64,000 nt of DNA, taken from the NCBI RefSeq assembly GCF_023055435.1, contig NW_025963913.1:12772001-12836000 (forward strand). The letters are read 5' to 3'. This stretch comes from Haliotis rufescens. Lineage: Eukaryota. The position numbers were made by a program, and so were the translations under genes. How positions within the stretch are numbered: the first letter of the stretch is position 1; each line of letters begins with the position of its first letter. This document shows, in pieces, positions 37,101 to 64,000 of this stretch. A model generated the notes under the pieces. The model was not told the DNA's origin. It made no database searches and saw nothing but the letters and a program-made list of their open reading frames with translations.

Positions 37101-40100
37101 CAACACGAAGCCCCTGCTGATGGAGGCAGTTGTTTTACCACCATGTCCTGTTACATCCAGTGGTACTGAGTGAGGAAAACCGGTCAGTGAGGAGTCCACG
37201 CTTCAACCAGGACTGGTCAAGACTGGTATATTTGGACAACCCAGCCAGAGGAGGACACAGCCAGTGTTCACGGCTAATGATGGTCAGTTGTTTCCCCATG
37301 TGGTGTTCATGGTATATACGGAAGAATCTAATTGGCATCGAGCAAGAGGCCATCTTACTTTTCTATTGAATCAGATTTGATTAAGATGTTACCTGATTAT
37401 GTAGCAATAGTATAACATCATGATGATGATGATAATGAACAGTTCAGGTAATGACAGCTATCTCTTGTCCTGTTGAGAAACAATTACCCATTTGTGCCGT
37501 AGGTGTGCTTCACTATGTAGATTATTTGTTTCAGTATGACTGGAACACGAAGAAAACAAGTGTAGTTCAGGACATTGTAGACTCTGCAGCAGGTTTGTGA
37601 TACTCTGATTGTGCTATAAAGATTTCATGTTCACGTCGTACTAACTAGTCCCTCAGATTTTTACATGAAAACATGATTGTAATTCAACATGTGTAATGTC
37701 TACTTCAACAAAATGTCATCTTTTTGTCATCTTGCAACTGGTGCTCAATAAAGCATTTTTGGAATTGATATATAGACCTTATATAGGCAATTGATGATAC
37801 TTACTCAGTACAGACAGATGTTCTGATACAAGACATCACTTCAACAATGGCTCCATGTTACCCAAGTCCAGTTCTTCAACTCAGATAATCAGGCTGATAA
37901 ACTAAACTTGTACTGGTGTCTCCTTACAGGGGAAGAGTTCCAAGGTATCTTTTCTGGCAACCTTCCTAGAAGACCGTGGTTACCTGGAGGAAGGGAGATA
38001 GTGCTGACTACCTTCTGGAGGAGTAGGCAGGTGAGTTACCTAGACGAGGGTGTTACCTGGAGGGAGGGAGATAGTGCTGACTACCTTCTGGAGGAGTAGG
38101 CAGGTGAGTTACCTAGACGAGGGTGTTACCTGGAGGAAGGGAGATAGTGCTGACTACCTTCTGGAGGAGTAGACAGGTGAGTTACCTAGACGAGGGTGTT
38201 ACCTGGAGGGAGGGAGATAGTGCTGACTACCTTCTGGAGGAGTAGACAGGTGAGTTACCTGGACGAAAGGTGTTAGACAGGTGGAGGAGTAAACAGGTGA
38301 GCTACCTAGACGAGGGTGTTACCTGGAGGGAGGGAGATAGTGCTGACTACCTTCTGGAGGAGTAGACAGGTGAGCTACCTAGATGAAGGTGTTACCTGGA
38401 CGAAGGTGTTACCTGGAGGGAGGGAGATAGTGCTGACTACCTTCTGGAGGAGCAGACAGGTGAGCTACCTAGACGAAGGTGTTACCTGGAGGGAGGGAGA
38501 TAGTGCTGACTACCTTCTGGAGGAGTAGGCAGGTGAGTTACCTAGACGAGGGTGTTAGACAGGTGGAGGAGTAAACAGGTGAGCTACCTAGACGAGGGTG
38601 TTAGACAGGTGGAGGAGTAAACAGGTGAGCTACCTAGACGAGGGTGTTACCTGGAGGGAGGGAGATAGTCCTGACTACCTTCTGGAGGAGTAGACAGGTG
38701 AGCTACCTAGACGAAGGTGTTACCTGGAGGGAGGGAGATAGTGCTGACTACCTTCTGGAGGAGTAGGCAGGTGAGTTACCTAGACGAGGGTGTTAGACAG
38801 GTGGAGGAGTAAACAGGTGAGCTACCTAGACGAGGGTGTTACCTGGAGGGAGGGAGATAGTGCTGACTACCTTCTGGAGGAGTAGACAGGTAAGTTACCT
38901 GGACGAGGGTGTTACCTGGAGGGAGGAAGATAGTGCTGACTACCTTCTGGAGGAGTAGACAGGTGAGTTACCTAGACGAGGGTGTTACCTGGAGGGAGGG
39001 AGATAGTGCTGACTACCTTCTGGAGGAGTAGACAGGTGAGTTACCTGGACGAAGGTGTTACCTGGAGGGAGGGAGATAGTCCTGACTACCTTCTGGAGGA
39101 GTAGACAGGTGAGCTACCTGGACGAAGGTGTTACCTGGAGGGAGGGAGATAGTGCTGACAACATTCTGGAGGAGTAGACAGGTGAGTTACCTAGATGAGG
39201 GTGTTACCTGGAGGGAGGGAGATAGTGCTGACAACATTCTGGAGGAGTAGACAGGTGAGTTACCTGGACGAAGGTGTTACCTGGAGGGAGGGAGATAGTC
39301 CTGACTACCTTCTGGAGGAGTAGACAGGTGAGCTACCTAGATGAGGATAGTCATCTTTGATGATACTCCTAGTTTCAGTGTTGAGATATGTATTGATTTG
39401 AAGGATTTTGATTTGTGTGTTTGTGCCTCCTAGATATGTTATGCCTGTTGACATAGTTCATTATCTGGTTCTGTGTTACCTATAGCATTAACAACTGAAA
39501 TGATCAGATATGTCTGGAGATCATATACTCCACTCAACTTGTGTTGTCACATTCATTCCTTGTTTTTGTGTGAGATCTGGAATTGCTGTAAACGTGACTT
39601 GGGTCCTCACTTCAATCCAGTGAGGGAATAGTACAATGTGTGAAGCCCATTTCTGGTGTCCCCCGCCGTGATATTGCTGGAATATTGCTAAAAGCGGCGT
39701 AAAACCATACTCACTCACTCACTCCCAGTGAGGGAATAGCAATAAAATAAATAATGTTCTTGTTATGACTGGCAGTAATTTCTTTGTTTACCAAGGTGAT
39801 AAAACTTTTTATCTTCTTAAGCATACACTATGGTTTCATTGTGATTTTCCTCGCAGGTGCCAGTGATCATTGACATCAACTCAAAAACAGTGAGGAAACT
39901 TGATACAGGTATTTGACTCATGATTATCAAATTGAGGTACAAATGACACTGTATTGTTGTGTTGGTCGGCTTCCTCCTTGGAAGAAACAACATGAGTCGG
40001 GATTCAATACACAAGCAATTTACTCAACTTATTAAGATGGTGACATGATGTGGTGATGTCATCAAAAGCTGTGCTCACTGTAGAAGGACAAGGTTCAGTC

Positions 40101-46100: not shown

Positions 46101-49100
46101 AAGCAGTAAAAACTCTTCTATGGCTTGGGTTGTCATTAATGATGTTGCTGTGTGTTGTAGGTGACCTGGACTACGAGAGTGTGTTGTGCATGCCGACATC
46201 AGCAACCCTCCCAAGAGACTACAAGCCACCTCTCATTGTCTTTCCACATGGTGAGGTTACAACAGGGTGTATCACCCTGGAAACATTGTGTCTCCTGAAA
46301 TGTAGTTCATAATTACATTGTAGGTTATTTGTTTGCTAACATTAAAGTTGCCATTGAAAATGATGTCCCATTGTGTTATGCAATATGATGCTTTTGTATA
46401 CCAAGATCAACACACATTCCAACATACCCCATCTTAAGTATGTAAGTAAATCCACCATCTACATATAGTTAGCTGCATAACAGAAATAATATATTTAAAT
46501 TGGTTCTGATTTTATCATAGATCAATATTTTGTATGTTGTAACATCTTCTTGATATCTTCAAATCAGTTGTTTCCCATAGAAATGTTGTTCTGAGTTATT
46601 TATTGTTCGTACCCTGTATATGGGAAGTCTGTTTGTTGTTGCATTGAGATGGATATGTGTGAAGGCTAGTCCACTGTTTCAGGTGGCCCACACACCACGT
46701 TTGACTGCCAGTTCCAGATGTACACAGCAGGCTTCTGTCAGTGTGGATATGCTGTGCTCATGGGTGAGTAGGTCAAGGATATGCTGTGCTCATGGGTGAG
46801 TAGGTCAAGGATATGCTGTGCTCATGGGTGAGAAGGTCAAGGATATACTGTGCTCATGGCTGAGTAGTTCAAGGATATGCTGTTCTCATGGTTGAATAGG
46901 TCTAGGATATGCTGTGCTCATGGGTGAGTAGGTCAAGGATTAACTGTGCTCATGGGTGAGTAGGTGAAGGATATGCTGTGCTCATCAGTGAGTAGGTGAC
47001 AGATATGCTGTTCTCATGGCTGAGTAGGTCAAGCACGGGTATGCTGTTTTCATGGGTGAGCAGGTCACAAGCAGCTTCTATGGCAGAATATAGGTTCAGG
47101 ATAAGGTGACCCCCTTACACATTTGAACGCAAGAAGGTGACGTGGGCTTGGGTGGCCAGGTGCTACAACCTCACAATTCTCTCAATGGATTTTTTTGAAT
47201 GGACACTCCTGATCTGTAAAATTCTGAATTTCCTGCTCAATTAGTTTATGTTATGTTGTCTTTTAATGTTTTAGTGAACTACCGTGGCTCTGTTGGGTTT
47301 GGTCAGAACAGTATTGACTCTCTCCTTGGAAATGTTGGGGATCAAGATGTGAAAGATGTCTGGGTGAGATGGGTAACAGATTTGTTACCTTTCAACAGCA
47401 ATAATTCTTGAAGAGTGACTGAGAACTATTTTCATGTTAAACTGTCAGCAATGTTTCAGCTGCGAGGGGTGTTCATTAAAGATTTCCCCTAAACCACTTT
47501 TAATAGGGTTATCATATTTGGTTGAAATTTCACATGTGTAATGATACATGTATCTATGGGTTATGTCTGAATTTGCAGCACCGAAGTATTAATCTTACCA
47601 CTTTTACAGGTGTTATGATCGAGTAGGGTGTGACAATGGAGCCAGTAGAATACCGAGCAGTGATTAGGTTTTTATATTTGAAAGGTCGCACACCAAAAGA
47701 GACTTTCGATGAAATGAAAGCAACTTATGGGGAAGATGCCCCATCGTATGACGTTGTTAAACACTGGCATCGCCAGTTCAAGTGTGGTCGGACATCTGTG
47801 GAAACAGCTGCCATTCCTGGTCGCCCCCATTGAGCCATTAATGAGGACACTATCCATCAAGTGGAGACCGCCATTTTGGCAGACCGATGTATAACTGTTC
47901 GCCAGTTAGCACAAGATGTCAAGATCAGTGTAGGGTCTGTGGAAAAAATCATCCATGACAATTTGAACATGCATAAGGTGTCTGCACGATGGATTCCCAG
48001 GTTGCTCACATCTTTCCAAAAGCAGGAACGAGTCAATTGCTCAAAGGATCTTTTGGACATGTGCCAAAAAATACAGGCAAACTTTTTTGACAGACTTATC
48101 GCACAAACATGGGTCCATCACTATGATCCTGAGACTAAAGTTCAGTCGATGCAATGGAAGCATGTGGGGTCACCACCCCCAAGGAAGTCACGTGTCCAAC
48201 CAGGGTCATGCTCACGGTGTTTTGGGACCAGCACGGAGTAGTGATGATGGATTTCTTGGCAAAGGGTACCACAATTACAGGAGCTTATTATGCTTCACTG
48301 CTGCGGAAATTGCGGGACGCTATCAAGCTTAAGAGGCGTGGCATGCTGACCAAGGGTGTCCATCTCCTGCAAGACAATGCTCCAGTACACAACACTCTCA
48401 TGTTGCCCAGACAGAAGCGCGGTCCTGTGGCTATGAAATCCTTCCACATCCTCCTTACTCTCCTGACCTTGCACCATCTGACTTCCACCTCTTTCCAACC
48501 ATGAAGTCATTTTTGAAGGGAAAACGTTTCACAGATGATGAAACACTGATTTCTGAAGTCAAGTCCTGGTTTGAGATGCAAAATGAGGGCTTTTACAAGC
48601 GAGGTCTCCATAGTTGCATAAAACGATGGGAGAAGTGTGTAACTCTTGTTGGTTCCTATGTGGAGAAAGACTAATACCTATGCCAAGTTTCATTCCACTA
48701 GGTCCATCGGAAGTGGGTCTGGGGAAATCTTTAATGAACACCCCTATCATTGTTGCCTCTTATAATCATGTCTGGACAAGGCAACCTTGTTGCTGACATA
48801 TCACATATTTTAAACCCCTTAATGAGTTTTTATCCCCTGCCTGGCCAGAATGGCCGAAGGGGGATTATGTTGTGGCGCAGTCCGTCCGTCCCTCTGTCTG
48901 TCCGTCCCACAGAGGGAACTAAGCTTGTGAAATCAACTCCTCCTACAGTTTCCAGAGAATATCCCTGAAACTCTACACACAAGATGTCTACATGTTGATG
49001 ATACGCATATCGCAGTCCCGTTTCATTTCGCCTATTTTTGACAGAGTTACTGCCCCTGTTTTACAGAACTTCATTTGCCTCATTGTGAGAGAGGGTACTA

Positions 49101-52100: not shown

Positions 52101-55100
52101 GATATGCCAGTATCCGTTGCGTAGATTTATACTAGCTTCCTCACAACACATCTGATAGGCCAGTATCCGGTACGTAGATGTATACTAGCTTCCTCACAAC
52201 ACATCTGATAGGCCAGTATCCGGTACGTAGATGTATACCAGCTTCCTCACAACACATCTGATAGGCCAGTATTCGGTATGTAGATGTATACTAGCTTCCT
52301 CAGAACACATCTGATAGGCCAGTATCCAGTACGTAGATGTATACTAGTTTCCTCACAACACATCTGATAGGCCAGTATCTGGTACGTAGATGTATACTAG
52401 CTTCCTCACAACACATCTGATAGGCCAGTATCTGGTATGTAGATGTATACTAGCTTCCTCAGAACACATCTGATATGCCAGTATCCCTTGCGTAGATTTA
52501 TACTAGCTTCCTCACAATACATCTGATTGGCCAGTATCCGGTACGTAGATGTATACTAGCTCCCTTACAACTCATCTGATAGGCCAGTATCTGATACGTA
52601 GATGTATACTAGCTTCCTCACAACACATCTGATAGGCCAGTGTCCGGTATGTAGATGTATACTAGCTTCCTCAGAACACATCTGATATGCCAGTATCCCT
52701 TGCGTAGATTTATACTAGCTCCCTCACAACACATCTGATAGGCCAGTATCTGATACGTAGATGTATACTAGTGTCAAAGCTGGACAAAGACGTTCTCTGG
52801 GTCCATGTATTTTATTAATACTGAAGATGGTAGACCTAAACAATAATATACAAACTTTTAATATACTTGGTAACATCATGTATAGCCTTTCATAGATGAT
52901 AATGGTGTATCGTATCTGCATATTACACATGCATATAATAATCATATATGGCTGAAAGTATCAGTTATCATACATTTATATTTCATCATAGTAATACACA
53001 CAGTGTAGTTCTTTTCAATGAACTCAATGCATAAAAGTACAATATAAACATTTGCATGGTAGAAAGTATCTTTTACATACAATGTCAAATGTACCAATAG
53101 CACTCACAGTAACTTCCAGTAAACTAACAGATCCAGTGGGTCTGAACACCTTTATAACAGTTTATATACTAAATAATCTAACTAATTACAAAGTAACTAA
53201 CATAAAGAAAGTATAGACAAACAAATGACAATGTACCCGTTGAGGTTTATAGACCTACCCCCAACTACCTCTGTTACATCTGTAAACGACCGGAATGGGC
53301 TTCCAGGCCTAGTAGGACGTAACTACAATACAACATGCAAAACTGACAATTCCATTCAAATACAGTCTTAGTATTTAACAACTTATCAATGCCTAATTCT
53401 ATAAACCACTCTGAGATTCGAGCCTTATTTAAGTCCCTCGCTTGCACGTGGCATTGAAACGTTAACAAAACGGAACAAAAGAAAAACAATGGAGTAGAAG
53501 TGTATAATTACAGTACAAGGGAAATTCGCGTCTCATGCAGTACAGCATGACCAACGGGAGATAACTGCTTATGGGATAGGTAGCTATAACAGTAGTCACT
53601 ACAACTAAAACCCGTACTTAATTTGTTAATCTCATTACACAATTTAAATATTATGCACTTCTTTGTGCTCACACAACCATTGAGAAAAGAAATGTTGACT
53701 AGGTTACAATTCTACTACTACTATGCTGATGAAAATATGTGTAAGCAATGAAACAGCCTCTCCACGGCGTTCCTATACTGACTATAGTACAGTGGCTGCT
53801 ACAAGATGGTAATTCGATACTTAACACAGTTTCTACAAAATTAAACTTTGCCACTAAAACCATCACAGACAAATGTACTTCTATAGCATCAAACAACAAT
53901 ATATCTGCTAAAGGGGTGTACTTACTCATTGATAAGATAGCTAATTAGAGCTTGTCCAAAACAATGTGCTCTGTGTTGAAACAATGTGCTCGGCTGGCTG
54001 GCTAAAACAATGGAATTGGCCTGAGCGCGAGATGGAGTGGTAAGCACAGCATTTTGGGATATCCCACAGTAATTAACTAAGGCCAGATACGTATTTGTGA
54101 ACTTGTAGGAAATAAACAAATCTTAAAAGGATATGGTTACATTAATGTGACATATAAAATAACTTCTTAATCAGGAATGTTTACAAACATTCCCGAGCAC
54201 AGTCGGAAACTGCCGAAGATGATGTAAGCAAAAGTGCGTGTCTGATAGCTACTTTACACTAGCTTCCTCACAACACATCTGATAGGCCAGTATCCAGTAC
54301 GTGGATGTATACTAGCTTCCTTACAACACATCTGATAGGCCAGTATCCAGTACGTGGATGTATACTAGCTTCCTTACAACACATCTGATAGGCCAGTATC
54401 TGATATGTAGATGTATACTAGCTTCCTCACAATACATCTGATAGGCCAGTCTCTCATATGTAGATGTATACTAGCTTCCTTACAACACATCTGATAGGCC
54501 AGTATCTGATACGTAGATGTATACCAGCTTCCTCACAATGCATCTGATAGGCCAGTATCCGGTACTTAGATGTATACCAGCTTCCTCACAATGCATCTTA
54601 TAGGCCAGTATCCGGTATGTAGATGTATACTAGCTTCCTCACAACACATCTGATAGGCCAGTATCCGGTCTGTAGATGTATACTAGCTTCCTCAGAACAC
54701 ATCTGATATGCCAGTATCCGTTGCAGAGATTTATACTAGCTTCCTCACAACACATCTGATAGGCCAGTATCTGATACGTAGATGTATACTAGCCTCCTCA
54801 CAACACATCTGATAGGCCAGTATCCGGTATGTAGATGTATACTAGCTTCCTCACAACACATCTAATAGGCCAGTATCCGGTATGTAGATGTATACTAGCT
54901 TCCTCACAACACATCTGATAGGCCAGTATCCAGTATGTAGATGTATACTAGCTTCCTCACAACACATCTAATAGGCCAGTATCCAGTACGTAGATGTATA
55001 CTAGCTTCCTCACAACACATCTAATAGGCCAGTATCCAGTACGTAGATGTATACTAGCTTCCTCACAACACATCTGATAGGCCAGTATCTGATACATAGA

Positions 55101-58100
55101 TGTATACTAGCTTCTTCACAACACATCTGATAGGCCAGTATCTGATACGTAGATGTATACTAGCTTCCTCACAACACATCTAATAGGCCAATATCCAGTA
55201 CGTAGATGTATACTAGCTTCCTCACAACACATCTAATAGGCCAGTATCCAGTACGTAGATGTATACTAGCTTCCTCACAACACATCTGATAGACCAGTAT
55301 CCAGTATGTAGATGTATACTAGCTTCCTCACAACACATCTAATAGGCCAGTATCCAGTACGTAGATGTATACTAGCTTCCTCACAACACATCTAATAGGC
55401 CAGTATCTGATACGTAGATGTATACCAGCTTCCTCACAATGCATCTAATAGGCCAGTATCCGGTATGTAGATGTATACTAGCTTCTTCAGAACACATCTG
55501 ATAGGCCAGTATCCGTTACGTAGATGTATACTAGCTTCCTCACAACACATCTGATTGGCCAGTATCCGGTACTTAGATGTATACCAGCTTCCTCAGTAGG
55601 TTTGATAGGTCTGTGTCCTGTTTGTTTGTTTGTTGGTTGGTTGGTTAACGTCGCAGCAATATTCCAGCTATATATAACAGCTGCTATAATCAAGTCTGGA
55701 CCAGACAATCCACTGATTGACGTCATGAGCATCAATCTACGCAATTGGGATATGATGACATGCATCAACCTAGTCAGCGAGTCTGACCAACCAAAAGCAA
55801 TAGTCACCGATGACGACAAACATAGGAGCCATTTACAGCAAGCATGGGTTGCTGAAGACCTGTTCTCTGCTAGGATGTTCAGGGGTCTGTCCTGTTTGTA
55901 GATATATATGCAAGTGAATATTATGCAGACCAAGCTCCACAGCCATACAGTAATTTCTTCAATAACATGAAATGGTTAAAGGAATTGAGGAATAAAGGAT
56001 TATTTTGCAGACAAAATTCAAGAGTGCAGCATGCAGAAATCCTGTGACAGATTTAACCAGTGAGTGATTAACTGTATTGCATTTTTTGAAGTCATATCCT
56101 GTAATAATGTTTTTGACAAAGCTTATTTGTATTGTATGGAATACCGAAACTGAAACTGATTATTTAAATCTATGGCAGTAGTTACTTGACAACCCTTTTA
56201 ATTGCTTTTTCTGCTTCCATGCATTTGCTGATATAATTGAGTTCTTGGCAACAATTTGAAGAAATATGATTTAATGTAATTTTTAGTTTAAACATATTTT
56301 GATCACATGTTATGAAAACAACTGGGCACAAGTTATTACATCCCTTGCCTTCTCCCATAACTTTTCAGAATGTACCTGTGTTTTTTTGTATTTGCGGTAT
56401 CCTAGGGGAAGATTAGATCAATGTCATGTATAAATATTATAAAAGATACATGGGTACAATGTGTGAAGCCCATTCCCGGTGTCCCCCGCTGTGATATTGC
56501 TGGAATATTGCTAAAAGCGGCGTAAAACCAAACTCACTCACTCACTCACAAAAGATACATAGAAGCTTGGGATAAAAGAAAAGTAAGAAGGGTTGATCAT
56601 TAAAAATATTTTCCAGACCCATATTATGCCCAGTCTGGAATCAATGCAGTGGCAAACAGGGCCATTAACCTAGTAATGATGCCTGCATCACAAGTGTTGA
56701 CCTAGTTATAGTGCCATGCATCAAGGGAGTTAACCTAGTTCTGGTTTATGCATCAGAGGAGTTAACCCAGATATGATGCCCACAAAAGGGGAGTTAACCT
56801 AGTTATGATGTCTTCATCAGGATGTTAACCCAGATATGATGCCTGCATCTGGGGAGTTAACCTAGTTATGATGGCTGTGTCAAGGGAGGTAACCTAGTTA
56901 TGATGGCTCAAGCTCCTTCCCAGCGTGTGACACCTTCGTTACACTCTCGGTAACATTGCTGCCACCAGTGTGGGCGCGGCCATTACAAGAATCTTGAAAT
57001 TTGCCCTCCAACCCCATATGTAGTAACGTTTATACTTTTGTTTATGTCTTTGGGAATGCCATCATATTTCAATTTGAAAAGGTTTACCACTGACCATGTT
57101 TTCCAGATGAATTTACTTTGTTGTTTTGATAATCAGATTGCTTCGAGATTGCAGACTAACAAAAAATCAACCAACTTCTCCCTTACATTCTTACTATATC
57201 AATAACACGATAGTTTTAATGAAACAGAAATTCAAATTGACAAACGAAGAAAGTAATTTAGAAGCGATAAGTGTATTCGGCGTCACAACAGTTGTCACTT
57301 GTTTGTAAACAAACAGTCATTCGGTTGCGAATTCAACTCCAAGCATGGTTGTGGCCACCTATTCACAGTGGGGAGTTTTGACTGGTGGCAGCGATAGTAT
57401 AGAGAGCTCCGGGAACGTACTATCGCTGAGAGGAGCTTGATGATGGCTGTGTCAAGGGAGGTAACCTAGTTAATGCATACATCAGGGGAGTTAACCCAGT
57501 TAGGCTACTGTGAAAAGGGTGGTTGTTGAGGAATGTAACATGTGTTTCAGACAAAGCTGCCTGTGGCGACCTGGCAGACAAGTGAGTTCCGTATCACCTT
57601 GTCTGTGTCACACCCACCAGAGCTACATTTAGTGATATGCTGATCACCATGAATAACAGACGGCTTTTACTATTGATAATAACAGTACCAGCTGTTCAGT
57701 ATACCTCTTGAGCGCTCTTGGTTGGTGTATGTGAGTAATGGTAGTTAGGGCTGGGACGGGTAACTCGGGTCCTGCAGTGGGTACCAGGGTAGGGTCAGGT
57801 AATGGAGGGTCTGATACCCAGGTAGTAAATGTGGGGTCATCCCGGCCCTAATGGTGGTATCAGTGGGACCTGTAATGATCAAGGCATTGTCCAGCAGTAC
57901 CAAAGGTATGTGTTCAATTTACCACATTGGTACATTTTGGGAGGCCATTTATTGTGATCGCCACCACATACATGGTTTGTTCAAGCAACGCAGTGAAACT
58001 TGTACTGTAGATCAATTTTTTGCAGATGTCCACTCAAATTATATGGTGAGGAATTTTCCAATGATATCTATGACAGCTGTCAGTATTGAATGTAGCTCTG

Positions 58101-61100
58101 GTGGTGGTAAGACCTTGTGTGGGTATTACTCAGATAGTTGACCAGTTCTGCTTGTGTTTCAGCTATGTATGGAGTGACTGATATTCCAGACTGGTAAGAA
58201 AGCTTCTTGTCAAGCCATTGTGCTGATGAAATCTTATAGTTACCTGAACAATTACACTTTTTTTGTTTTCTTATTTCATTTATTGCAAAGCTTTAGACAT
58301 ATTTCCAAACATATAACCAATATCATCAATGCCATTGTTATTAAACAATCAGTAGGATTCCAGGATATTCCATATGCCAGTTGTAAGGGGGTATCACTAG
58401 TCAGTAGGATGTGTTATAACCTGGCTTCCTAACCTCACAGCTGGGTCAGTGTTATCTCACTTCACAGCTAGATCAGTGTTATCTCACTTCACAGCTAGAT
58501 CAGTGTTATCTCACCTCACAGCTGGGTCAGTGTTATCTCACTTCACAGCTAGATCAGTGTTATCTCACTTCACAGCTAGATCAGTGTTATCTCACCTCAC
58601 AGCTGGGTCAGTGTTATCTCACTTCACAGCTAGATCAGTGTTATCTCACTTCACAGCTAGATCAGTGTTATCTCACTTCACAGCTAGATCAGTGTTATCT
58701 CAATTCACAGCTAGATCAGTGTTATCTCACTTCACAGCTAGATCAGTGTTATCTCACTTCACAGCTAGATCAGTGTTATCTCACCTCACAGCTAGATCAG
58801 TGTTATCTCACTTCACAGCTAGATCAGTGTTATCTCACTTCACAGCTAGATCAGTGTTATCTCACTTCACAGCTAGATCAGTGTTATCTCACTTAACAGC
58901 TAGATCAGTGTTATCTCACCTCACAGCTAGATCAGTGTTATCTCACTTCACAGCTAGATCAGTGTTATCTCACTTCACAGCTAGATCAGTGTTATCTCAC
59001 TTCACAGCTGGATCAGTGTTATCTCACCTCACAGCTAGATCAGTGTTATCTCACTTCACAGCTAGATCAGTGTTATCTCACTTCACAGCTAGATCAGTGT
59101 TATCTCACTTCACAGCTAGATCAGTGTTATCTCACTTCACAGCTAGATCAGTGTTATCTCACTTCACAGCTAGATCAGTGTTATCTCACCTCACAGCTAG
59201 ATCAGTGTTATCTCACTTCACAGCTAGATCAGTGTTATCTCACTTCACAGCTAGATCAGTGTTATCTCACTTCACAGCTAGATCAGTGTTATCTCACTTC
59301 ACAGCTGGATCAGTTTTATCTCACCTCACAGCTGGATCAGTGTTATCTCACCTCACAGCTGGATCAGTGTTATCTCACCTCACAGCTGGGTCAGTGTTGT
59401 TATCTCATCTCACAGCTGGGTCAGTGTTATCTCACCCTCACAGCTGGGTCAGTGTCATCTCACCTCACAGCTGGTCAATGTTATCTTACCTCAGAGCTGG
59501 GTCAGTTTTATCACAGTTGGATCAGTGTTATCTCACCTCACAGCTGGATCAGTTTTATCTCACATGACAGCTGGGTCAGTGTTATCTCACCCTCACAACT
59601 GGGTCAGAGTAATCTCACCTGACAGCTGGATCAAAGTTATCTCACCCTCACAGCTGGGTCAGTGTTATCTCACCTCACAGCTGGGTCAGTGTTATCTCAC
59701 CTCACAGCTGGGTCAGTGTTATCTCACCTCACAACATGGTCAGTGTTATCTCACCTCACAGCTGGGTCAGTGTCATCTCACCTCACAGCTGGGTCAATGT
59801 TATCTTACCTTAGAGCTGGGTCAGTTTTATCACAGCTGGATCAGTGTTATCATACCCTCACAGCTGGGTCAGTGTCATCTCACCTCACAGCTGGGTCAAT
59901 GTTAACATACCTCAGAGCTGGGTCAGTTTTATCACAGTTGGATCAGTGTTATCTCACCTCACAGCTGGATCAGTTTTATCTCACATGACAGCTGGGTCAG
60001 TGTTATCTCACCTCAGAGCTGGGTCAGTGTTATCTCACCTCACAACATGGTCAGTGTTATCTCACCTCACAGCTGGGTCAGTGTCATCTCACCTCACAGC
60101 TGGGTCAATGTTATCTTACCTTAGAGCTGGGTCAGTTTTATCACAGCTGGATCAGTGTTATCATACCCTCACAGCTGGGTCAGTGTCATCTCACCTCACA
60201 GCTGGGTCAATGTTAACATACCTCAGAGCTGGGTCAGTTTTATCACAGCTGGATCAGTGTTATCTCACCTCAGAGCTGGGTCAGTGTTATCTCACACTCA
60301 CAACTGGGTCAGTGTTATCTCACCTCAGAGCTGGGTCAGTGTTATCCCACCTCACAACATGGTCAGTGTTATCTCACACTCACAGCTGGGTCAGTGTTAT
60401 CTCACCTCACAGCTGGGTCAGTGTTATCTCACACTCACAGCTGGGTCAGTTTTATCACAGCTGGGTCAGTGTTATCTCACTCTTACCGCTGGGTCAGTTT
60501 TATCGCACCTCAGAGCTGGGTCAGTATTATCTCCTCAGAGCTTGGTCTGTTTTATCTCACCCACACAGGTGGGACAATGTTATCTCACCTTACAGCTGGA
60601 TCAGTGTTATCTCACCTCAGAGCTCGATAAGTGTTATCTCACCGCACAGGTGGGTGGGTCAGTGTTATCTCACCTCACAGCTGGATCAGTGTTATCTCAC
60701 CTCACAGCTGGGTCAGTGTTATCTCACTCTCACAGCAGGGTCAGTGTTATCCCACCCTCACAGTTGGATCAGTGATATCTCATCCTCACAGCAGGGTCAG
60801 TGTTATCTCACCTCACAGCTGGGTCAGTGTTATCGCACCTAACAGTTGGGTCAATGTTAACGTACCTCAGAGCTGGGTCAGTTTGATCACAGTTGGATCA
60901 GTGTTATCTCACCTCAGAGCTGGGTCAGTGTTATCTCACACTCAAAACTGGGTCAGTGTTATTTCACCTCAGAGCTGGGTCAGTGTTATCTCACCTCACA
61001 GCAGTGTCAGTGTTATCTCACACTCACAGCTGGGTCAGTGTTATCTCACACTCACAGCTGGGTCAGTGTTATCTCACCTCACAGCTGGGTCAGTGTTATC

Positions 61101-62176
61101 TCACTCTCACCACTGGATCAGTGTTACCTCACACTCAGAGCTGGGTCAGTGTTATCTCACACTCACAACTGGGTCAGTGTTATCTTACCTCACAGCTGGA
61201 TCAGTGTTATCTCCTCAGAGCTGGGTCAGTATTATCTCCTCAGAGCTTGGTCCGTTTTATCTCACCCACACAGGTGGGTCAATGTTATCTCACCTTACAG
61301 CTTGGTCAGTTTTATCCCACACTCACAGCTGGATAAGTGTTATCTCACCTCACAGCTGGATAAGTGTTATCTCACCTCACAGGTGGGTCAGTGTTATCTC
61401 TCCTCACAGCTGGGTCAGTGTTATCTCACCTCACAGCTGGGTCAGTTTTATCCCAACTCATAGCTAGGTCAGTGTTATCTCACCTCACAGCTGAATCAGG
61501 GTTGTCTCACCCTCACAGCTGGATAAGTGTTATCATACCCTCACAGCAGGGTCAATGTTATCTCACCTCACAGCAGGGTCAGTGTTATCTCTCCTCACAC
61601 CTGGATCAGTGTTATCTCACCTCACAGGTGGGTCAGTGTTATCTCACTCTCACAGCAGGGTCAGTGTTATCTCACCTCACAGCTGGGTCAGTGTTATCTC
61701 ACCTAACAGCTTGTTTGTTTGTTTCGTGTTTAATACCACACACAATTCCAGCTATATGACGGTGGTCTGTAAATGATCGAATCTGGACCAAACAATCCAG
61801 TGATTGACATTGTGAGCATCAATCCATGCAATTGGAATATGATGACATGCATCAAACCAAGTCAGCGAGTCTGACCACCCGATCCCTTGAGTCACCTCTT
61901 ACAACAAGCATAGTTGCCTTTTACGGCAAGCATGGGTTGCTGGAGACCTGTTCTACCCTGGATCTTCACGGGTCCACCTCACAGCTGGGTCAGTGTTATT
62001 CAGCCTCACTGCTGAGGTATTGCAATTGATATCCTATTTGCCTATTCTGTGCAAAATTTCTTTTCACATGCAGGGTGTTTGAAGAGATAGGACAACAGTT
62101 TGAGTTCACATCACTGTCCAGTGCTGAGATCCTAGGGGAACTATGGACGAGATCTCCCCTCAGCTATGTCAGCCAG
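28061..62176 (+). CDS. APEH: acylamino-acid-releasing enzyme (acylpeptide hydrolase, peptidase S9C), 3'-partial; 21 coding exons, 656 codons in window
   Basis: All introns GT-AG with consistent phases; motifs [62 protein letters not shown] (catalytic Ser), RNPV, TDIPDW, SPLSY; the catalytic Asp/His exons are expected beyond 64000. Confidence 0.95.
29772..29846 (+). pseudogene. degenerate tRNA-like sequence (SINE head or tRNA pseudogene)
   Basis: A-box TAGCTCAGTCGG, anticodon-like stem tcggg-ctaacaa-tccga, GAGTTCG; acceptor and T stems pair poorly. Confidence 0.5.
30118..30190 (-). pseudogene. degenerate tRNA-Arg(TCG)-like sequence (SINE head or pseudogene)
   Basis: Minus strand TGGTCATGTGGACAAGGCGTCCAACCTCGGATCAGAAGG...GGTTGGAATCCC resembles eukaryotic tRNA-Arg; T-loop and stems mutated. 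Confidence 0.5.
30352..31891. mobile_element. foldback / long-TIR DNA element, right end truncated at a SINE
   Basis: Arms 30420..30784 and 31565..31891 are reverse complements with internal ~38-bp subrepeats; left boundary approximate. Confidence 0.75.
31892..32341 (+). mobile_element. full-length tRNA-derived SINE with Meta-like core
   Basis: A-box TGGTCTAGAGG, B-box GGTTCGATCCC, core gtcataccaaaagac...tacttgttgttaccctg...gcattaagg, tail gaaatattgttcaaagtggctttaaac + (CACT)n. Confidence 0.8.
32508..32740 (+). CDS. APEH: APEH exon 2
   Basis: [14 protein letters not shown]...WSQRDL...; tacag / gtaaga. Confidence 0.9.
33441..33531 (+). CDS. APEH: APEH exon 3
   Basis: [14 protein letters not shown]...EEKQYFE; gtaagg. 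Confidence 0.92.
33927..34005 (+). CDS. APEH: APEH exon 4
   Basis: [12 protein letters not shown]...[10 protein letters not shown]; gtaagg. Confidence 0.92.
34089..34500. mobile_element. older hAT-type MITE
   Basis: Ends tagggctg / cagtccta; flanks ctagactg / ctaggatg (8 bp, 2 mismatches). Confidence 0.55.
34619..34761 (+). CDS. APEH: APEH exon 5
   Basis: [21 protein letters not shown]...; gtaaga. Confidence 0.93.
35404..35541 (+). CDS. APEH: APEH exon 6
   Basis: [14 protein letters not shown]...ISAGQ; gtaaga. Confidence 0.93.
35827..35918 (+). CDS. APEH: APEH exon 7
   Basis: [30 protein letters not shown]; gtcagt. Confidence 0.93.
36200..36240 (+). CDS. APEH: APEH exon 8
   Basis: [13 protein letters not shown]; gtaagt. 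Confidence 0.9.
36280..37097. repeat. 39-bp minisatellite, ~21 copies, filling APEH intron 8
   Basis: Unit gtgtcagtgtgttgtgccttggtatccttgatgttactc. Confidence 0.95.
37161..37282 (+). CDS. APEH: APEH exon 9
   Basis: [14 protein letters not shown]...HSQCSRLMM; gtcagt. Confidence 0.92.
37535..37592 (+). CDS. APEH: APEH exon 10
   Basis: [19 protein letters not shown]; gtttgt. Confidence 0.9.
37930..38030 (+). CDS. APEH: APEH exon 11
   Basis: [16 protein letters not shown]...FWRSRQ; gtgagt. Confidence 0.92.
37979..39346 (+). repeat. 73-bp tandem array made of the last 52 nt of exon 11, the donor and 21 nt of intron (~18-20 copies)
   Basis: Unit gttacctggagggagggagatagtgctgactaccttctggaggagtagacag|gtgagttacctagacgagggt; copy 1 is the real exon end. 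Confidence 0.95.
39632..39724 (+). mobile_element. 5'-truncated SINE (3' ~90 bp) with (ACTC)n tail
   Basis: 15-bp TSD ccagtgagggaatag; near-identical copy at 56452. Confidence 0.85.
39857..39908 (+). CDS. APEH: APEH exon 12
   Basis: [17 protein letters not shown]; tcgcag / gtattt. Confidence 0.88.
40712..41186. mobile_element. MITE (family B), copy 2, inverted relative to 17168
   Basis: TIR cagtgttcccg / cgggaacgctg; 6-bp TSD gtcttg. Confidence 0.85.
41972..42060 (+). CDS. APEH: APEH exon 13
   Basis: [29 protein letters not shown]; gtatgt. Confidence 0.88.
43361..43617 (-). mobile_element. SINE-like repeat family A
   Basis: (GTTT)n tail plus blocks shared with four other copies. Confidence 0.85.
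44729..44858 (+). CDS. APEH: APEH exon 14
   Basis: [12 protein letters not shown]...RVHVQY; gtgagc. Confidence 0.9.
45693..46007 (+). mobile_element. SINE-like repeat family A with a duplicated 5' segment
   Basis: Reverse complement of the other copies; tgaagatc...cttcagcaac occurs twice; (AAAC)n tail. Confidence 0.85.
46161..46250 (+). CDS. APEH: APEH exon 15
   Basis: [11 protein letters not shown]...PPLIVFPH; gtgagg. Confidence 0.93.
46683..46763 (+). CDS. APEH: APEH exon 16
   Basis: [27 protein letters not shown]; gtgagt. Confidence 0.94.
46745..47067 (+). repeat. 32-bp tandem array made of the last 19 nt of exon 16, the donor and 13 nt of intron (~10 copies)
   Basis: Unit ggatatgctgtgctcatgg|gtgagtaggtcaa. 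Confidence 0.95.
47275..47363 (+). CDS. APEH: APEH exon 17
   Basis: [30 protein letters not shown]; gtgaga. Confidence 0.95.
47463..48747 (+). mobile_element. full-length but inactivated mariner (DD34D) transposon
   Basis: TIRs aggggtgttcattaaagatttcccc at both ends; transposase 47636..48674 with [32 protein letters not shown]; stop at 47831, frameshifts, first catalytic D region apparently deleted. Confidence 0.93.
48826..49856 (+). mobile_element. Helentron-associated (HINE/DINE-1-like) element carrying ~5 tandem ~180-bp cores
   Basis: 5' ttatcccc...ggggatta hairpin, (GTCC/GTCT)n microsatellite, then repeats with actaagc at 48918, 49097, 49274, 49454, 49634; family assignment inferred from architecture. 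Confidence 0.7.
50098..50208 (+). CDS. APEH: APEH exon 18 (catalytic Ser, GGSHGG)
   Basis: [37 protein letters not shown]; gtacgt. Confidence 0.95.
50174..55594 (+). repeat. 53-bp tandem array made of the last 35 nt of exon 18, the donor and 18 nt of intron (~49 + ~25 copies, split by a 1.5-kb insertion)
   Basis: Unit gcttcctcacaacacatctgataggccagtatccg|gtacgtagatgtatacta. Confidence 0.96.
52772..54258 (-). mobile_element. probable solo LTR inserted in the 53-bp array
   Basis: TGTcaaag...ctttACA ends, 4-bp TSD ctag precisely splitting one unit, AATAAA on the minus strand ~40 bp from its 3' end, no convincing ORF. Confidence 0.7.
55619..55888 (-). mobile_element. SINE-like repeat family A
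   Basis: (GTTT/GTTG)n tail and shared blocks. Confidence 0.85.
56011..56059 (+). CDS. APEH: APEH exon 19
   Basis: [16 protein letters not shown]; ttttgcag / gtgagt. Confidence 0.93.
56452..56549 (+). mobile_element. 5'-truncated SINE with (ACTC)n tail
   Basis: 11-bp TSD aaaagatacat; same family as 39632. Confidence 0.85.
56660..57505. repeat. degenerate ~33-bp minisatellite (ggagttaacctagttatgatg...), interrupted by a MITE
   Basis: Recurrent ttaacc(t/c)ag motif about every 33 bp, resuming after 57440. Confidence 0.75.
56909..57439. mobile_element. non-autonomous DNA element with 9-bp TSD (Mutator-like)
   Basis: Ends caagctcct / aggagcttg with imperfect ~60-bp TIRs (gctgccaccagt shared); atgatggct on both flanks. 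Confidence 0.75.
57551..57581 (+). CDS. APEH: candidate alternative (mutually exclusive) APEH microexon 20a
   Basis: tgtgtttcag acceptor, 31 nt, phase 1 to 2, donor gtgagt; encodes [11 protein letters not shown] in place of [11 protein letters not shown]. Confidence 0.6.
57746..57850. mobile_element. 105-bp hAT-type mini-MITE
   Basis: TIR tagggctgggac / atcccggcccta; flanks atggtagt / atggtggt; a related end lies at 30065..30090. Confidence 0.7.
58163..58193 (+). CDS. APEH: APEH exon 20 (20b, canonical TDIPDW)
   Basis: tgtgtttcag acceptor, 31 nt, [10 protein letters not shown], gtaaga. Confidence 0.93.
58432..62003. repeat. 27-bp minisatellite, >100 copies, in APEH intron 20
   Basis: Unit tcacagct(a/g)g(a/g)tcagtgttatctcac(t/c); homogeneous at 58455-59300, degenerate distally; SINE inserted near the end. 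Confidence 0.95.
61711..61974 (-). mobile_element. SINE-like repeat family A inserted into the 27-bp array
   Basis: Shared blocks; the array unit resumes at 61975. Confidence 0.85.
62074..62176 (+). CDS. APEH: APEH exon 21
   Basis: [34 protein letters not shown]; gtatgg. Confidence 0.93.
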
Positions 62177-64000
62177 GTATGGTGTGCTTCCCTCAGTTAC
62201 ATCAGCCAGGTACACAGTGTGTCTCCCCTCAGTTACATCAGCCAGGTACACAGTGTGTCTCCCCTCAGTTACATCAGCCAGGTACACAGTGTGTCTCCCC
62301 TCAGTTACAACAACCAGGCACACAGTGTGTCCCCCGCTCAGTTACATCAGCCAGGCACACAGTGTGTCTCCCCTCAGATACATCAGCCAGGTACACAGTG
62401 TGTCTCCCCTCAGTTACATGAGCCAGGTACTGTGTGTCTCCCCTCAGTTACATCAGCCAGGCACACAGTGTGTCTCCCCTCAGTTACATCAGCCAGGTAC
62501 ACAGTGTGTCTCCCCTCAGTTACATCAGCCAGGTACTGTGTGTCTCCCCTCAGTTACATCAGCCAGGTACACAGTGTGTCTCCCCTCAGTTACATCAGCC
62601 AGGTACACAGTGTGTCTCCCCTCAGTTACAACAACCAGGCACACAGTGTGTCCCCCGCTCAGTTACATCAGCCAGGCACACAGTGTGTCTCCCCTCAGAT
62701 ACATCAGCCAGGTACACAGTGTGTCTCCCCTCAGTTACATGAGCCAGGTACTGTGTGTCTCCCCTCAGTTACATCAGCCAGGCACACAGTGTGTCTCCCC
62801 TCAGTTACATCAGCCAGGTACACAGTGTGTCTCCCCTCAGTTACATCAGCCAGGTTCACAGTGTGTCTCCCCTCAGTTACATCAGCCAGGTACTGTGTGT
62901 CTCCCCTCAGTTACATCAGCCAGGTACACAGTGTGTCTCCCCTCAGTTACATGAGCCATGTACACAGTGTGTCTCCCCTCAGTTACATCAGCCAGGTACT
63001 GTGTGTCTCCCCTCAGTTACATCAGCCAGGTACACAGTGTGTCTCCCCTCAGTTACATGAGCCATGTACACAGTGTGTCTCCCCTCAGTTACATCAGCCA
63101 GGTACTGTGTGTCTCCCCTCAGTTACATCAGCCAGGTACACAGTGTGTCTCCCCTCAGTTACATCAGCCAGGTATACAGTGTGTCTCCCCTCAGTTACAT
63201 CAGCCAGGTACACTGTGTGTCTCCCCTCAGTTACATCAGCCAGGTACACGTGTGTCTCCCCTCAGTTACATCAGCCAGGTGCACAGTGTGTCTCCCCTCA
63301 GTTACATCAGCCAGGTACACACTGTGTCTCCCCTCAGTTACATCAACCAGGTACACACTGTGTCTCCCCCCAGTTACAACAACCAGGTACACAGTGTGTC
63401 TCCCCTCAGTTACATCAGCCAGGTACACAGTGTGTCTCCCCTCAGTTACATCAACCAGGTACACACTGTGTCTCCCCTCAGTTACATCAGCCAGGTACAC
63501 AGTGTGTCTCCCCCCAGTTACATCAGCCAGGTACACAGTGTGTCTCCCCCCAGTTACAACAACCAGGTACACAGTGTGTCTCCCCCCAGTTACATCAGCC
63601 AGGTACACAGTGTGTCTCCCCTCAGTTACATCAGCCAGGTACACAGTGTGTCTCCCCTCAGTTACATCAGCCAGGTACACAGTGTGTCTCCCCTCAGTTA
63701 CATCAGCCAGGTACACAGTGTGTCTCCCCTCAGTTACAACAACCAGGTACACAGTGTGTCTCCCCTCAGTTACATCAGCCAGGTACACAGTGTGTCTCCC
63801 CTCAGTTACATCAGCCAGGCACACAGTGTGTCTCCCCCCAGTTACATCAGCCAGGTACACAGTGTGTCTCCCCTCAGTTACATCAACCAGGTACACAGTG
63901 TGTCTCCCCTCAGTTACATGAGCCAGGTACTGTGTGTCTCCCCTCAGTTACATCAGCCAGGTACACAGTGTGTCTCCCCTCAGTTACATCAGCCAGGTAC
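62153..64000 (+). repeat. 36-bp tandem array made of the last 24 nt of exon 21, the donor and 12 nt of intron (~50 copies, runs off the window)
   Basis: Unit tctcccctcagttacatcagccag|gtacacagtgtg, with 33-35-bp variants. Confidence 0.95.

What the first reader, a model, noticed from the sequence alone, without database searches (positions are those of the whole stretch)
37979..64000. Recurrent splice-donor-seeded minisatellites: four APEH exon ends independently amplified into arrays of duplicated 5' splice sites
Seen: after exons 11, 16, 18 and 21 the intron begins with a tandem array whose unit is [3' end of that same exon + GT donor + first 12-21 intron nt]. Units are 73, 32, 53 and 36 bp, in ~19, ~10, ~74 and >=50 copies. 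The four units are unrelated in sequence, so these are four independent events among 21 donors. All share one polarity (copy 1 is the coding exon end), and I saw no array carrying an exon 5' end at an acceptor. The result is well over 100 donor-like copies, many identical to the real one. Inference: either a mutational process targets exon/donor junctions (co-transcriptional R-loops or breaks at the 5' splice site, then slippage or unequal exchange), or selection filters random duplications; either way the spliceosome must reliably choose the first of many identical donors. I do not know of this being described as a system, but I cannot search the literature here.
Basis: partly seen in the sequence, partly recalled or inferred. 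Interest (0 to 1): 0.9.

Follow-up and report, generated by a model that had tools for sequence, protein, structure and literature searches.

The report
Splice-donor "mirage" minisatellites in abalone APEH
Four introns of the red abalone APEH gene begin with long tandem arrays that copy the end of the preceding exon plus its splice donor; the arrays are real, but this kind of repeat is already known ("mirages" in amphioxus, one VNTR in human F7) and has apparently not been reported in a mollusc.

Summary
The window is Haliotis rufescens (red abalone), and the gene is its RefSeq APEH-like gene. After exons 11, 16, 18 and 21 the intron starts with a tandem array. Each unit is the last 19-52 nt of that exon, the GT donor, and 12-21 intron nt. 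Units are 73, 32, 53 and 36 bp, in 20, 10, 73 and 141 copies. The 36-bp array runs 3.2 kb past the window.

The four units are unrelated and occur nowhere else in the 1.33-Gb assembly. They carry about 200 decoy GT sites, and 29 have the same 9-mer as the real donor.

The phenomenon is published as "mirage" minisatellites in amphioxus and as the human F7 intron-7 VNTR.

Targeting of donors is not shown. Minisatellites make up about half of this gene and 20% of a random 200-kb sample. Array-free introns are only 100-500 nt, so random seed duplications should hit a donor about 1.2 times in 9 (P=0.02 for four or more). I found one further donor array in the random sample, in a PKC-like gene.

I obtained no RNA reads. 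First-donor use rests on RefSeq models and protein conservation. Other first-stage notes report many such arrays elsewhere in this genome.

The parts
37932..38030 (+). APEH exon 11 (ends ..TTFWRSRQ). The real donor CAG|GTGAGT starts at 38031.
   Evidence: tblastn with P0173 is 100% identical; sequence read.
37979..39346 (+). 73-bp array. Unit is the last 52 nt of exon 11 plus GT plus 21 intron nt. There are 1 real and 19 decoy junctions, and all keep GT. Nine decoys have the same 9-mer as the real donor. Shorter 46/47-nt variant units occur.
   Evidence: The unit is found only at this locus. Reading on from the exon frame meets a stop after 22 codons.
39848..39907 (+). Approximate position of exon 12 ([17 protein letters not shown]), about 500 nt past the array. 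The array is therefore not the whole intron.
   Evidence: tblastn with P0173 residues 379-398, 95% identity.
46682..46763 (+). APEH exon 16 ([27 protein letters not shown]). The real donor is TGG|GTGAGT.
46745..47067 (+). 32-bp array. Unit is the last 19 nt of exon 16 plus GT plus 13 intron nt. There are 1 real and 9 decoy junctions. Six decoys keep GT and three have the identical 9-mer.
   Evidence: Found only at this locus. A stop follows after 2 codons.
50098..50208 (+). APEH exon 18 with the catalytic serine motif GGSHGG (ends ..LIGQYP). The real donor is CCG|GTACGT.
50174..52771 (+). 53-bp array, proximal block (49 copies). Unit is the last 35 nt of exon 18 plus GT plus 18 intron nt. It has a higher-order period of 17 units.
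   Evidence: Found only at this locus.
52772..54257 (.). Unrelated 1.49-kb insertion that splits the 53-bp array. ACTAG lies at both edges and may be a target-site duplication. No long ORF.
54258..55595 (+). 53-bp array, distal block (25 copies). Over both blocks there are 1 real and 72 decoy junctions. 54 decoys keep GT and 17 have the identical 9-mer.
62075..62176 (+). APEH exon 21 (ends ..[11 protein letters not shown]). The real donor is CAG|GTATGG.
62153..64000 (+). 36-bp array. Unit is the last 24 nt of exon 21 plus GT plus 12 intron nt. It continues to window-equivalent 67199 (L009:3199). There are 1 real and 140 decoy junctions, and 123 decoys keep GT. All decoys are weaker (mostly CAG|GTACAC) than the real donor. 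The array is in frame and open for 1105 codons. Copy 1 is only 73% identical to the array units, while neighbouring units are 92% alike.
36280..37100 (.). 39-bp x21 intronic array with no exon sequence. It starts 38 nt after the exon-8 donor and ends 62 nt before exon 9, filling 821 of the 921 nt of the intron.
48911..49788 (.). 179-bp x4.9 intronic array, not exon-derived.
56665..56908 (.). 32-bp x7.6 intronic array, not exon-derived.
58432..61711 (.). 27-bp x122 intronic array. It starts 239 nt after the microexon donor and resumes briefly at 61975-62005 after a SINE-like insertion. No exon sequence.

Best explanation
These are 'mirage'-type minisatellites, that is, local tandem duplications that happened to straddle an exon/intron junction. 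Each then grew by replication slippage and unequal exchange.

The red abalone genome carries an extreme minisatellite load. Arrays fill most of many introns, and the array-free parts of these introns are only about 100-500 nt. A 30-70-nt seed duplication therefore has a 10-25% chance of overlapping a splice junction. No donor-directed mechanism is needed to explain most of the pattern.

Junction-straddling arrays persist for two reasons. First, the spliceosome uses the exon-proximal (first) donor, as was shown experimentally for the human F7 VNTR. Second, any use of a decoy in the 73-, 32- and 53-bp arrays would add a frameshift and an early stop, so the transcript would probably be removed by nonsense-mediated decay. 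In the one in-frame array (36 bp) every decoy donor is weaker than the real one.

Shown here: the anatomy, the local origin of each unit, the minisatellite load, the short array-free introns, and the consequences for the reading frame. Inferred: the growth mechanism, first-donor use in vivo, and neutrality.
For: Each unit is unique to its own site in the assembly.

Arrays total 19.3 kb of the 38.9 kb from the first coding exon to the stop codon. In a random 5 x 40 kb sample of the same contig there are 25 arrays covering 20% of the bases.

With array-free intron lengths of 100-500 nt, the short-intron null expects 1.21 donor-spanning and 1.21 acceptor-spanning arrays among 9. P(>=4 donor)=0.02 and P(>=4 either junction)=0.19.

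Growth by multi-unit exchange is suggested by the 17-unit higher-order period in the 53-bp array. Copy 1 of the 36-bp array is excluded from homogenisation (73% identity to the array versus 92% between neighbours). The amphioxus globin paper reports the same edge effect (PMC3087553).

All RefSeq isoforms in four Haliotis species, and the Gigantopelta ortholog, hold a single copy of each exon end. Reading into the arrays gives stops after 22, 2 and 12 codons.

The random sample holds an unselected second case in a PKC-like gene on L016 (minus strand). It has a 44-nt unit and 1+43 junction copies. One donor-spanning array among that gene's four arrays fits the null expectation of about 0.4-0.5 (my own arithmetic with the same formula).

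Published precedents are PMC3087553, PMC3902484 and PMC1557585.
Against: Four donor-spanning arrays out of nine still exceeds the short-intron null (P=0.02).

All five verified units share one layout, about two thirds exon plus only 8-21 intron nt. The exon fraction is 0.59-0.71, with P about 9e-4 under a uniform model (post hoc). A purely random seed does not predict this.

Other first-stage notes on this genome report gene-wide junction arrays in at least five other windows (unverified). That is more than a per-gene chance of a few per cent would suggest.

In the PKC-like gene another array starts exactly at intron position +5.

No RNA reads were available, so first-donor use is inferred and not observed.
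Confidence: 0.6

Rival explanations
1. A mutational process is really focused on splice junctions. For example, breaks or template switches could occur within about 20 nt downstream of the 5' splice site during co-transcriptional splicing. In that case arrays are seeded at exon/donor borders far more often than chance allows.
For: 4 of 9 arrays span a donor against 1.21 expected (P=0.02). The unit layout is uniform in 5 of 5 cases, with an intron part of only 8-21 nt and an exon fraction of 0.59-0.71. An array in the PKC-like gene starts at intron position +5. Many other first-stage notes report donor and acceptor arrays, some gene-wide (unverified).
Against: The window was chosen because of the pattern. 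The excess shrinks from P about 8e-4 to 0.02 once short array-free introns are allowed for, and to 0.19 for either junction.

Five of nine arrays in the same gene hold no exon sequence. A donor-motif test on 25 arrays from a random sample found no enrichment (0 of 25 at p<=0.05), although that test is weak.

GC skew differs in sign between the arrays, which does not fit one R-loop-type cause. No mechanism of this kind is known, and the amphioxus paper calls the mechanism unclear.
Confidence: 0.25
2. The arrays are functional. They might serve as U1 snRNP landing pads that protect long introns from premature polyadenylation, as splicing regulators, or, for the in-frame 36-bp array, as a source of variable 12-residue insertions.
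For: The 36-bp array is in frame and open for 1105 codons. About 200 GT-bearing decoys sit in one gene.
Against: A 12-codon unit is open in a given frame about half the time by chance (my estimate). All 140 decoys of that array have a weaker donor than the real one.

No RefSeq isoform in four abalone species contains an array unit. Half of the arrays in the same gene carry no splice-site copy at all. The three other arrays give early stops if used.
Confidence: 0.06
3. The arrays are assembly artefacts, that is, collapsed or inflated repeats.
For: Long, near-identical tandem repeats are the hardest regions to assemble. Copy numbers could not be checked with reads here.
Against: Units carry many ordered variants and higher-order periods. 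A 1.49-kb foreign insertion sits inside the 53-bp array, and a SINE-like element interrupts the 27-bp array near its distal end. The same architecture recurs in an unrelated gene 10 Mb away.
Confidence: 0.03

Closest known systems
'Mirage' minisatellites of amphioxus (Canestro et al. 2002, Adh3; Ebner et al. 2010, globins, PMC3087553; Pavelitz et al. 2013, PGBD5, PMC3902484)
   Same: Both are tandem, minisatellite-size repeats whose unit spans an exon/intron boundary and carries the splice signal. The units are unrelated between sites. The array lies in the intron next to the real exon. Normal mRNA is reported in amphioxus and inferred here. Edge copies are excluded from homogenisation. The mechanism is unknown.
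   Different: The host here is a gastropod mollusc, not a cephalochordate. The scale is much larger, at 10-141 copies and up to 5 kb, against 3-6 units in the globin genes. Four arrays occur in one gene. Only donor-side arrays occur in this gene, whereas amphioxus shows both sides. Somatic or allelic length instability, shown in amphioxus, could not be tested here.
Human F7 intron-7 37-bp VNTR with 5' pseudo-sites (Borensztajn et al. 2006, PMC1557585)
   Same: The first repeat unit spans the exon/intron boundary, so the authentic donor is followed by identical silent donors. The model of exclusive use of the most upstream site applies directly.
   Different: F7 is a single locus with a handful of repeats. 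Here there are hundreds of decoys. In the PKC-like gene most decoys are stronger than the first site. Usage was tested by minigenes in F7 and is only inferred here.
Intron gain by tandem duplication of an AGGT-containing exon segment (Rogers model; discussed in PMC3087553)
   Same: Both involve duplication of a segment that holds a splice junction.
   Different: The introns here have unique sequence beyond the arrays, and the next exon lies 200-500 nt past each array. The arrays enlarge existing introns and do not create new ones. My test of the idea that the 73-bp array is the whole intron failed.

Membership tests
[quoted passage not shown] | Head-to-tail array with a minisatellite-size unit (about 10-160 bp) | tested here: met
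   Units of 73, 32, 53 and 36 bp in 20, 10, 73 and 141 copies.
[quoted passage not shown] | The unit contains exon sequence, the splice signal and adjoining intron sequence, and one edge copy is the authentic junction | tested here: met
   Copy 1 of each array is the coding exon end, 100% identical to RefSeq protein P0173.
[quoted passage not shown] | The array does not disturb normal splicing of the mRNA | tested here: inconclusive
   RefSeq isoforms and orthologs hold one copy of each exon end.
[quoted passage not shown] | Length instability or polymorphism between alleles or tissues | not testable with these tools
F7-type VNTR with silent 5' pseudo-sites | Decoy donors identical in sequence to the authentic donor | tested here: met
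   9, 3 and 17 decoys share the real 9-mer in the 73-, 32- and 53-bp arrays. None does in the 36-bp array.
F7-type VNTR with silent 5' pseudo-sites | Only the most upstream donor is used | tested here: inconclusive
   The conserved reading frame requires it, because decoy use gives stops after 22, 2 and 12 codons or 12-residue insertions. This is not observed in RNA.
Intron creation by tandem duplication (Rogers model) | The intron consists of the duplicated segment, with its two ends in successive copies | tested here: not met
   The candidate exon abutting the 73-bp array was refuted. The real exon 12 lies at about 39848-39907. All four introns have unique sequence after the array.

The most novel reading that the evidence does not exclude
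Abalone may have a junction-directed repeat-seeding process. Under this reading, tandem arrays arise preferentially from a segment that ends 8-21 nt inside the intron and reaches 19-52 nt back into the exon. They would occur genome-wide at donors (and in mirror form at acceptors), well above what short introns and a high minisatellite birth rate predict. That would point to a link between co-transcriptional 5' splice-site recognition and DNA breakage or template switching. It would also make abalone a natural library of thousands of tandem decoy splice sites, some stronger than the real one.
Probability: 0.25. Interest if true: 0.75.

Novelty: new member of a known kind. Interest (0 to 1): 0.45.

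Why it matters
The arrays are natural experiments in 5' splice-site choice. One real donor is followed by up to 140 tandem copies. In the PKC-like gene, 41 of 43 decoys match the donor consensus better than the first site does. This extends the F7 'first site wins' finding far beyond what minigenes have tested.

The arrays also show how introns of a 1.3-Gb mollusc genome have been inflated. About half of this gene is minisatellite DNA.

Finding mirage-type repeats in a lophotrochozoan as well as in amphioxus suggests they follow from a high minisatellite load and are not a cephalochordate oddity.

On the practical side, such arrays can mislead gene prediction, exon capture and read mapping.

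Tried and rejected
1. I tested whether the 73-bp array is the entire intron, with an acceptor in its last unit and a next exon at 39342-39390. The frame and length fitted orthologs. It was rejected because the RefSeq protein places exon 12 at about 39848-39907.

2. I ran a donor-motif enrichment test on consensus units of 25 arrays from a random 200-kb sample. It found no excess (0 of 25 at p<=0.05). The test is too weak to decide, because the verified 36-bp mirage itself scores p=0.35.

3. I asked whether GC-rich exon ends make better seeds. Arrays in the random sample have 41% GC against a 39% background, so this is not supported.

4. I scanned open frames flanking sample arrays against Pfam to find more exon-anchored arrays. 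Only the kinase exon was recognised.

I did not resend or trim that stretch to the reads tools. Later I used 147 nt from inside it for an own-genome search.

8. The original mirage paper (Canestro 2002, PMC117041) is not held. I cite it through PMC3087553.

Exons were handled one by one.
Full report
**Identity of the locus.** The window maps to G000:C135:12772001-12836000 of a 1.33-Gb assembly. The RefSeq protein XP_048257485 (P0173, acylamino-acid-releasing enzyme-like isoform X2 of Haliotis rufescens) aligns exon by exon at about 100% identity. Its contig length on record, 13,835,785, equals that of C135. The window is therefore red abalone, as other follow-up agents had noted.

**The observation.** TRF reports the four arrays at the stated coordinates. 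Reading the sequence shows that copy 1 of each array is the coding exon end followed by GT.
- Exon 11 ends at 38030 (CAG|GTGAGT).
- Exon 16 ends at 46763 (TGG|GTGAGT).
- Exon 18, which holds the catalytic GGSHGG motif, ends at 50208 (CCG|GTACGT).
- Exon 21 ends at 62176 (CAG|GTATGG).

The units hold 52+21, 19+13, 35+18 and 24+12 nt of exon plus intron. I fetched the next 9 kb. The 36-bp array runs to window-equivalent 67199, giving 141 copies and 5.05 kb.

Counting junction copies in register gives the following.

| Array | Junction copies (real + decoy) | Decoys keeping GT | Decoys with the real 9-mer |
|---|---|---|---|
| 73 bp | 1 + 19 | 19 | 9 |
| 32 bp | 1 + 9 | 6 | 3 |
| 53 bp | 1 + 72 | 54 | 17 |
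| 36 bp | 1 + 140 | 123 | 0 |

In the 36-bp array none of the decoys is as strong as the real donor.

Each unit occurs only at its own site in the whole assembly. The arrays are therefore four independent, locally born repeats and not copies of a dispersed element.

The same gene holds five more large intronic arrays without any exon sequence. These are the 39-, 179-, 32- and 27-bp arrays in the window and a 55-bp x62 array in the last intron. Arrays total 19.3 kb of the 38.9 kb between the first coding exon and the stop codon. No array includes an acceptor or an exon 5' end in this gene.

**Consequences for splicing.** Reading on from the exon frame into the arrays meets a stop after 22, 2 and 12 codons for the 73-, 32- and 53-bp arrays. 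Those unit lengths are not multiples of three. The 36-bp array is in frame and open for 1105 codons.

RefSeq isoforms X1-X3 of H. rufescens, the models of H. cracherodii, H. rubra and H. asinina, and the Gigantopelta ortholog all hold one copy of each exon end joined to the next exon. The conserved protein therefore requires the first donor of each array.

It is suggestive, though based on only four arrays, that the one in-frame array is the one whose decoys all have a weakened donor. Its use would not be cleared by nonsense-mediated decay.

**Is it known?** Yes.
- Ebner et al. [quoted passage not shown] They cite Canestro et al. 2002 for Adh3 and note further loci. They report that splicing is not disturbed, that both 5' and 3' boundaries can be duplicated, that edge copies escape homogenisation, and that the mechanism is unclear (PMC3087553).
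- Pavelitz et al. 2013 add PGBD5 and TnC (PMC3902484).
- Borensztajn et al. [quoted passage not shown] They showed that identical downstream pseudo-sites stay silent because selection follows a 5'-to-3' scanning process (PMC1557585).

Full-text searches for such arrays in abalone or molluscs found nothing. One paper only records a polymorphic 27-bp intronic minisatellite in H. discus hannai (PMC6905558).

**Is there targeting of donors?** A naive estimate uses 22 donors, a 48-nt mean unit and about 19.7 kb of non-array gene. It gives 5.4% per array and P=8e-4 for four of nine. That null is wrong for this genome.

After removing arrays and inserted elements, the array-bearing introns are mostly only about 100-500 nt long; the two exceptions are about 1.2 and 1.9 kb. 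Examples are 100 nt for intron 8, about 160 nt for the intron after exon 18, and 200 nt after exon 16. If a seed of the observed length is placed uniformly in such an intron or across either of its junctions, the expectation is 1.21 donor-spanning and 1.21 acceptor-spanning arrays among nine. P(>=4 donor-spanning)=0.02 and P(>=4 at either junction)=0.19. These figures are before correcting for the fact that the window was selected for this pattern.

**An unselected sample.** I fetched five 40-kb blocks spaced along contig C135. The blocks hold 25 arrays with period >=12 and >=4 copies, covering 20% of the bases. A donor-motif test on their consensus units showed no excess, but the test is weak.

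Inspecting open frames that cross array borders revealed a PKC-like gene on the minus strand of L016. Its kinase exon matches Pfam PF00069 with E=4e-18.
- In one intron a 44-nt unit made of the last 31 nt of the exon (..HLHSTFQSK) plus GT plus 13 nt is repeated 1+43 times. 41 of the 43 decoys (AAG|GTATGT) match the donor consensus better than copy 1 (AAG|GTTTGT). The conserved junction FQSK|SHLFFVMEY needs copy 1.
- The 32-bp array of the next intron starts at position +5 of the donor.
- A 46-bp array ends about 20 nt before the following acceptor.

One donor-spanning array among this gene's four arrays is what the short-intron null predicts (about 0.4-0.5).

**Open points.** All five verified units have the same layout, with an exon fraction of 0.59-0.71 and an intron part of 8-21 nt. 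Under a uniform model such a narrow range has P about 9e-4. This is post hoc for four of the five cases.

Other first-stage notes on this genome list many donor arrays, acceptor arrays and 'gene-wide' cases in at least five other windows. They are unverified AI notes, but they show that the scan has met this pattern repeatedly on other DNA. A junction-directed process therefore cannot be excluded, and I give it 0.25.

GC-richness of exon ends as a growth advantage is not supported by the random sample.

**Artefact?** Unlikely. Units carry ordered variants, and the 53-bp array has a 17-unit higher-order period. A 1.49-kb unrelated insertion splits that array. A SINE-like element interrupts the 27-bp array near its distal end.

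**Verdict.** The structure is real, striking in scale, and correctly described. It is a mollusc instance of a published kind of repeat. Most probably it is a tolerated by-product of massive minisatellite growth in originally short introns. The claims of novelty as a system and of donor targeting are not established.

Noticed in passing
L016:7551-9916 (minus strand; G000:C135 about 2.527-2.530 Mb): A PKC-like kinase gene in the random sample has its own donor mirage. The 44-nt unit is 31 nt of exon end plus GT plus 13 nt, in 1+43 copies. 41 decoys (AAG|GTATGT) fit the donor consensus better than the first copy (AAG|GTTTGT), which the conserved reading frame requires.
   Followed up: yes
L016:5597-7083 and L016:5144-5358 (minus strand): In the same PKC-like gene a 32-bp x46 array starts at position +5 of the next donor, and a 46-bp x4.7 array ends about 20 nt before the following acceptor. 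The introns are filled almost end to end by arrays.
   Followed up: partly
window 57551-57581 and 58163-58193: Two 31-nt microexons are used in a mutually exclusive way. RefSeq isoform X2 has [11 protein letters not shown], while X1, X3 and all orthologs have [11 protein letters not shown]. This agrees with a first-stage note on the same window.
   Followed up: partly
window 52772-54257: A 1.49-kb insertion sits inside the 53-bp array, with ACTAG at both edges. It has no long ORF and its nature is unknown.
   Followed up: partly
window about 55630-55880, 61712-61975 and near 43400-43680: Copies of a SINE-like element sharing a block similar to '..CTGGACCAGACAATCCAGTGAT..' lie just beyond the distal end of the 53-bp array and interrupt the 27-bp array near its distal end. 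The same element translates as an ORF next to an array in sample block L014.
   Followed up: no
window 6894-9414 (+): A string of open frames with reverse-transcriptase-like motifs suggests a LINE-type retroelement upstream of the gene.
   Followed up: no
window 31903-31958 (+): A weak tRNA match (Rfam RF00005, 30.5 bits, just above the gathering score) lies in APEH intron 1. It may be a tRNA-derived repeat.
   Followed up: no
L023-L025 (G000:C135 about 5.513-5.534 Mb): A 172-bp satellite covers about 12 kb (68 copies), with a related 3.6-kb block nearby. It makes up 44% of that 40-kb sample block.
   Followed up: no
protein P0011 (unknown organism, 100 aa) and P0001/P0156: Gene fragments from other, unnamed assemblies show the same APEH catalytic-exon end twice in one open frame (GGF.TGHLMGQHPER.. 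repeated). This hints that this exon border has been duplicated in other species too.
   Followed up: no
protein P0175 (H. asinina paralog, alignment A1 columns 379-429): The H. asinina paralog model lacks the residues encoded by exons 11-12, the exon that carries the 73-bp array in red abalone. This may be a prediction failure caused by a similar array.
   Followed up: no
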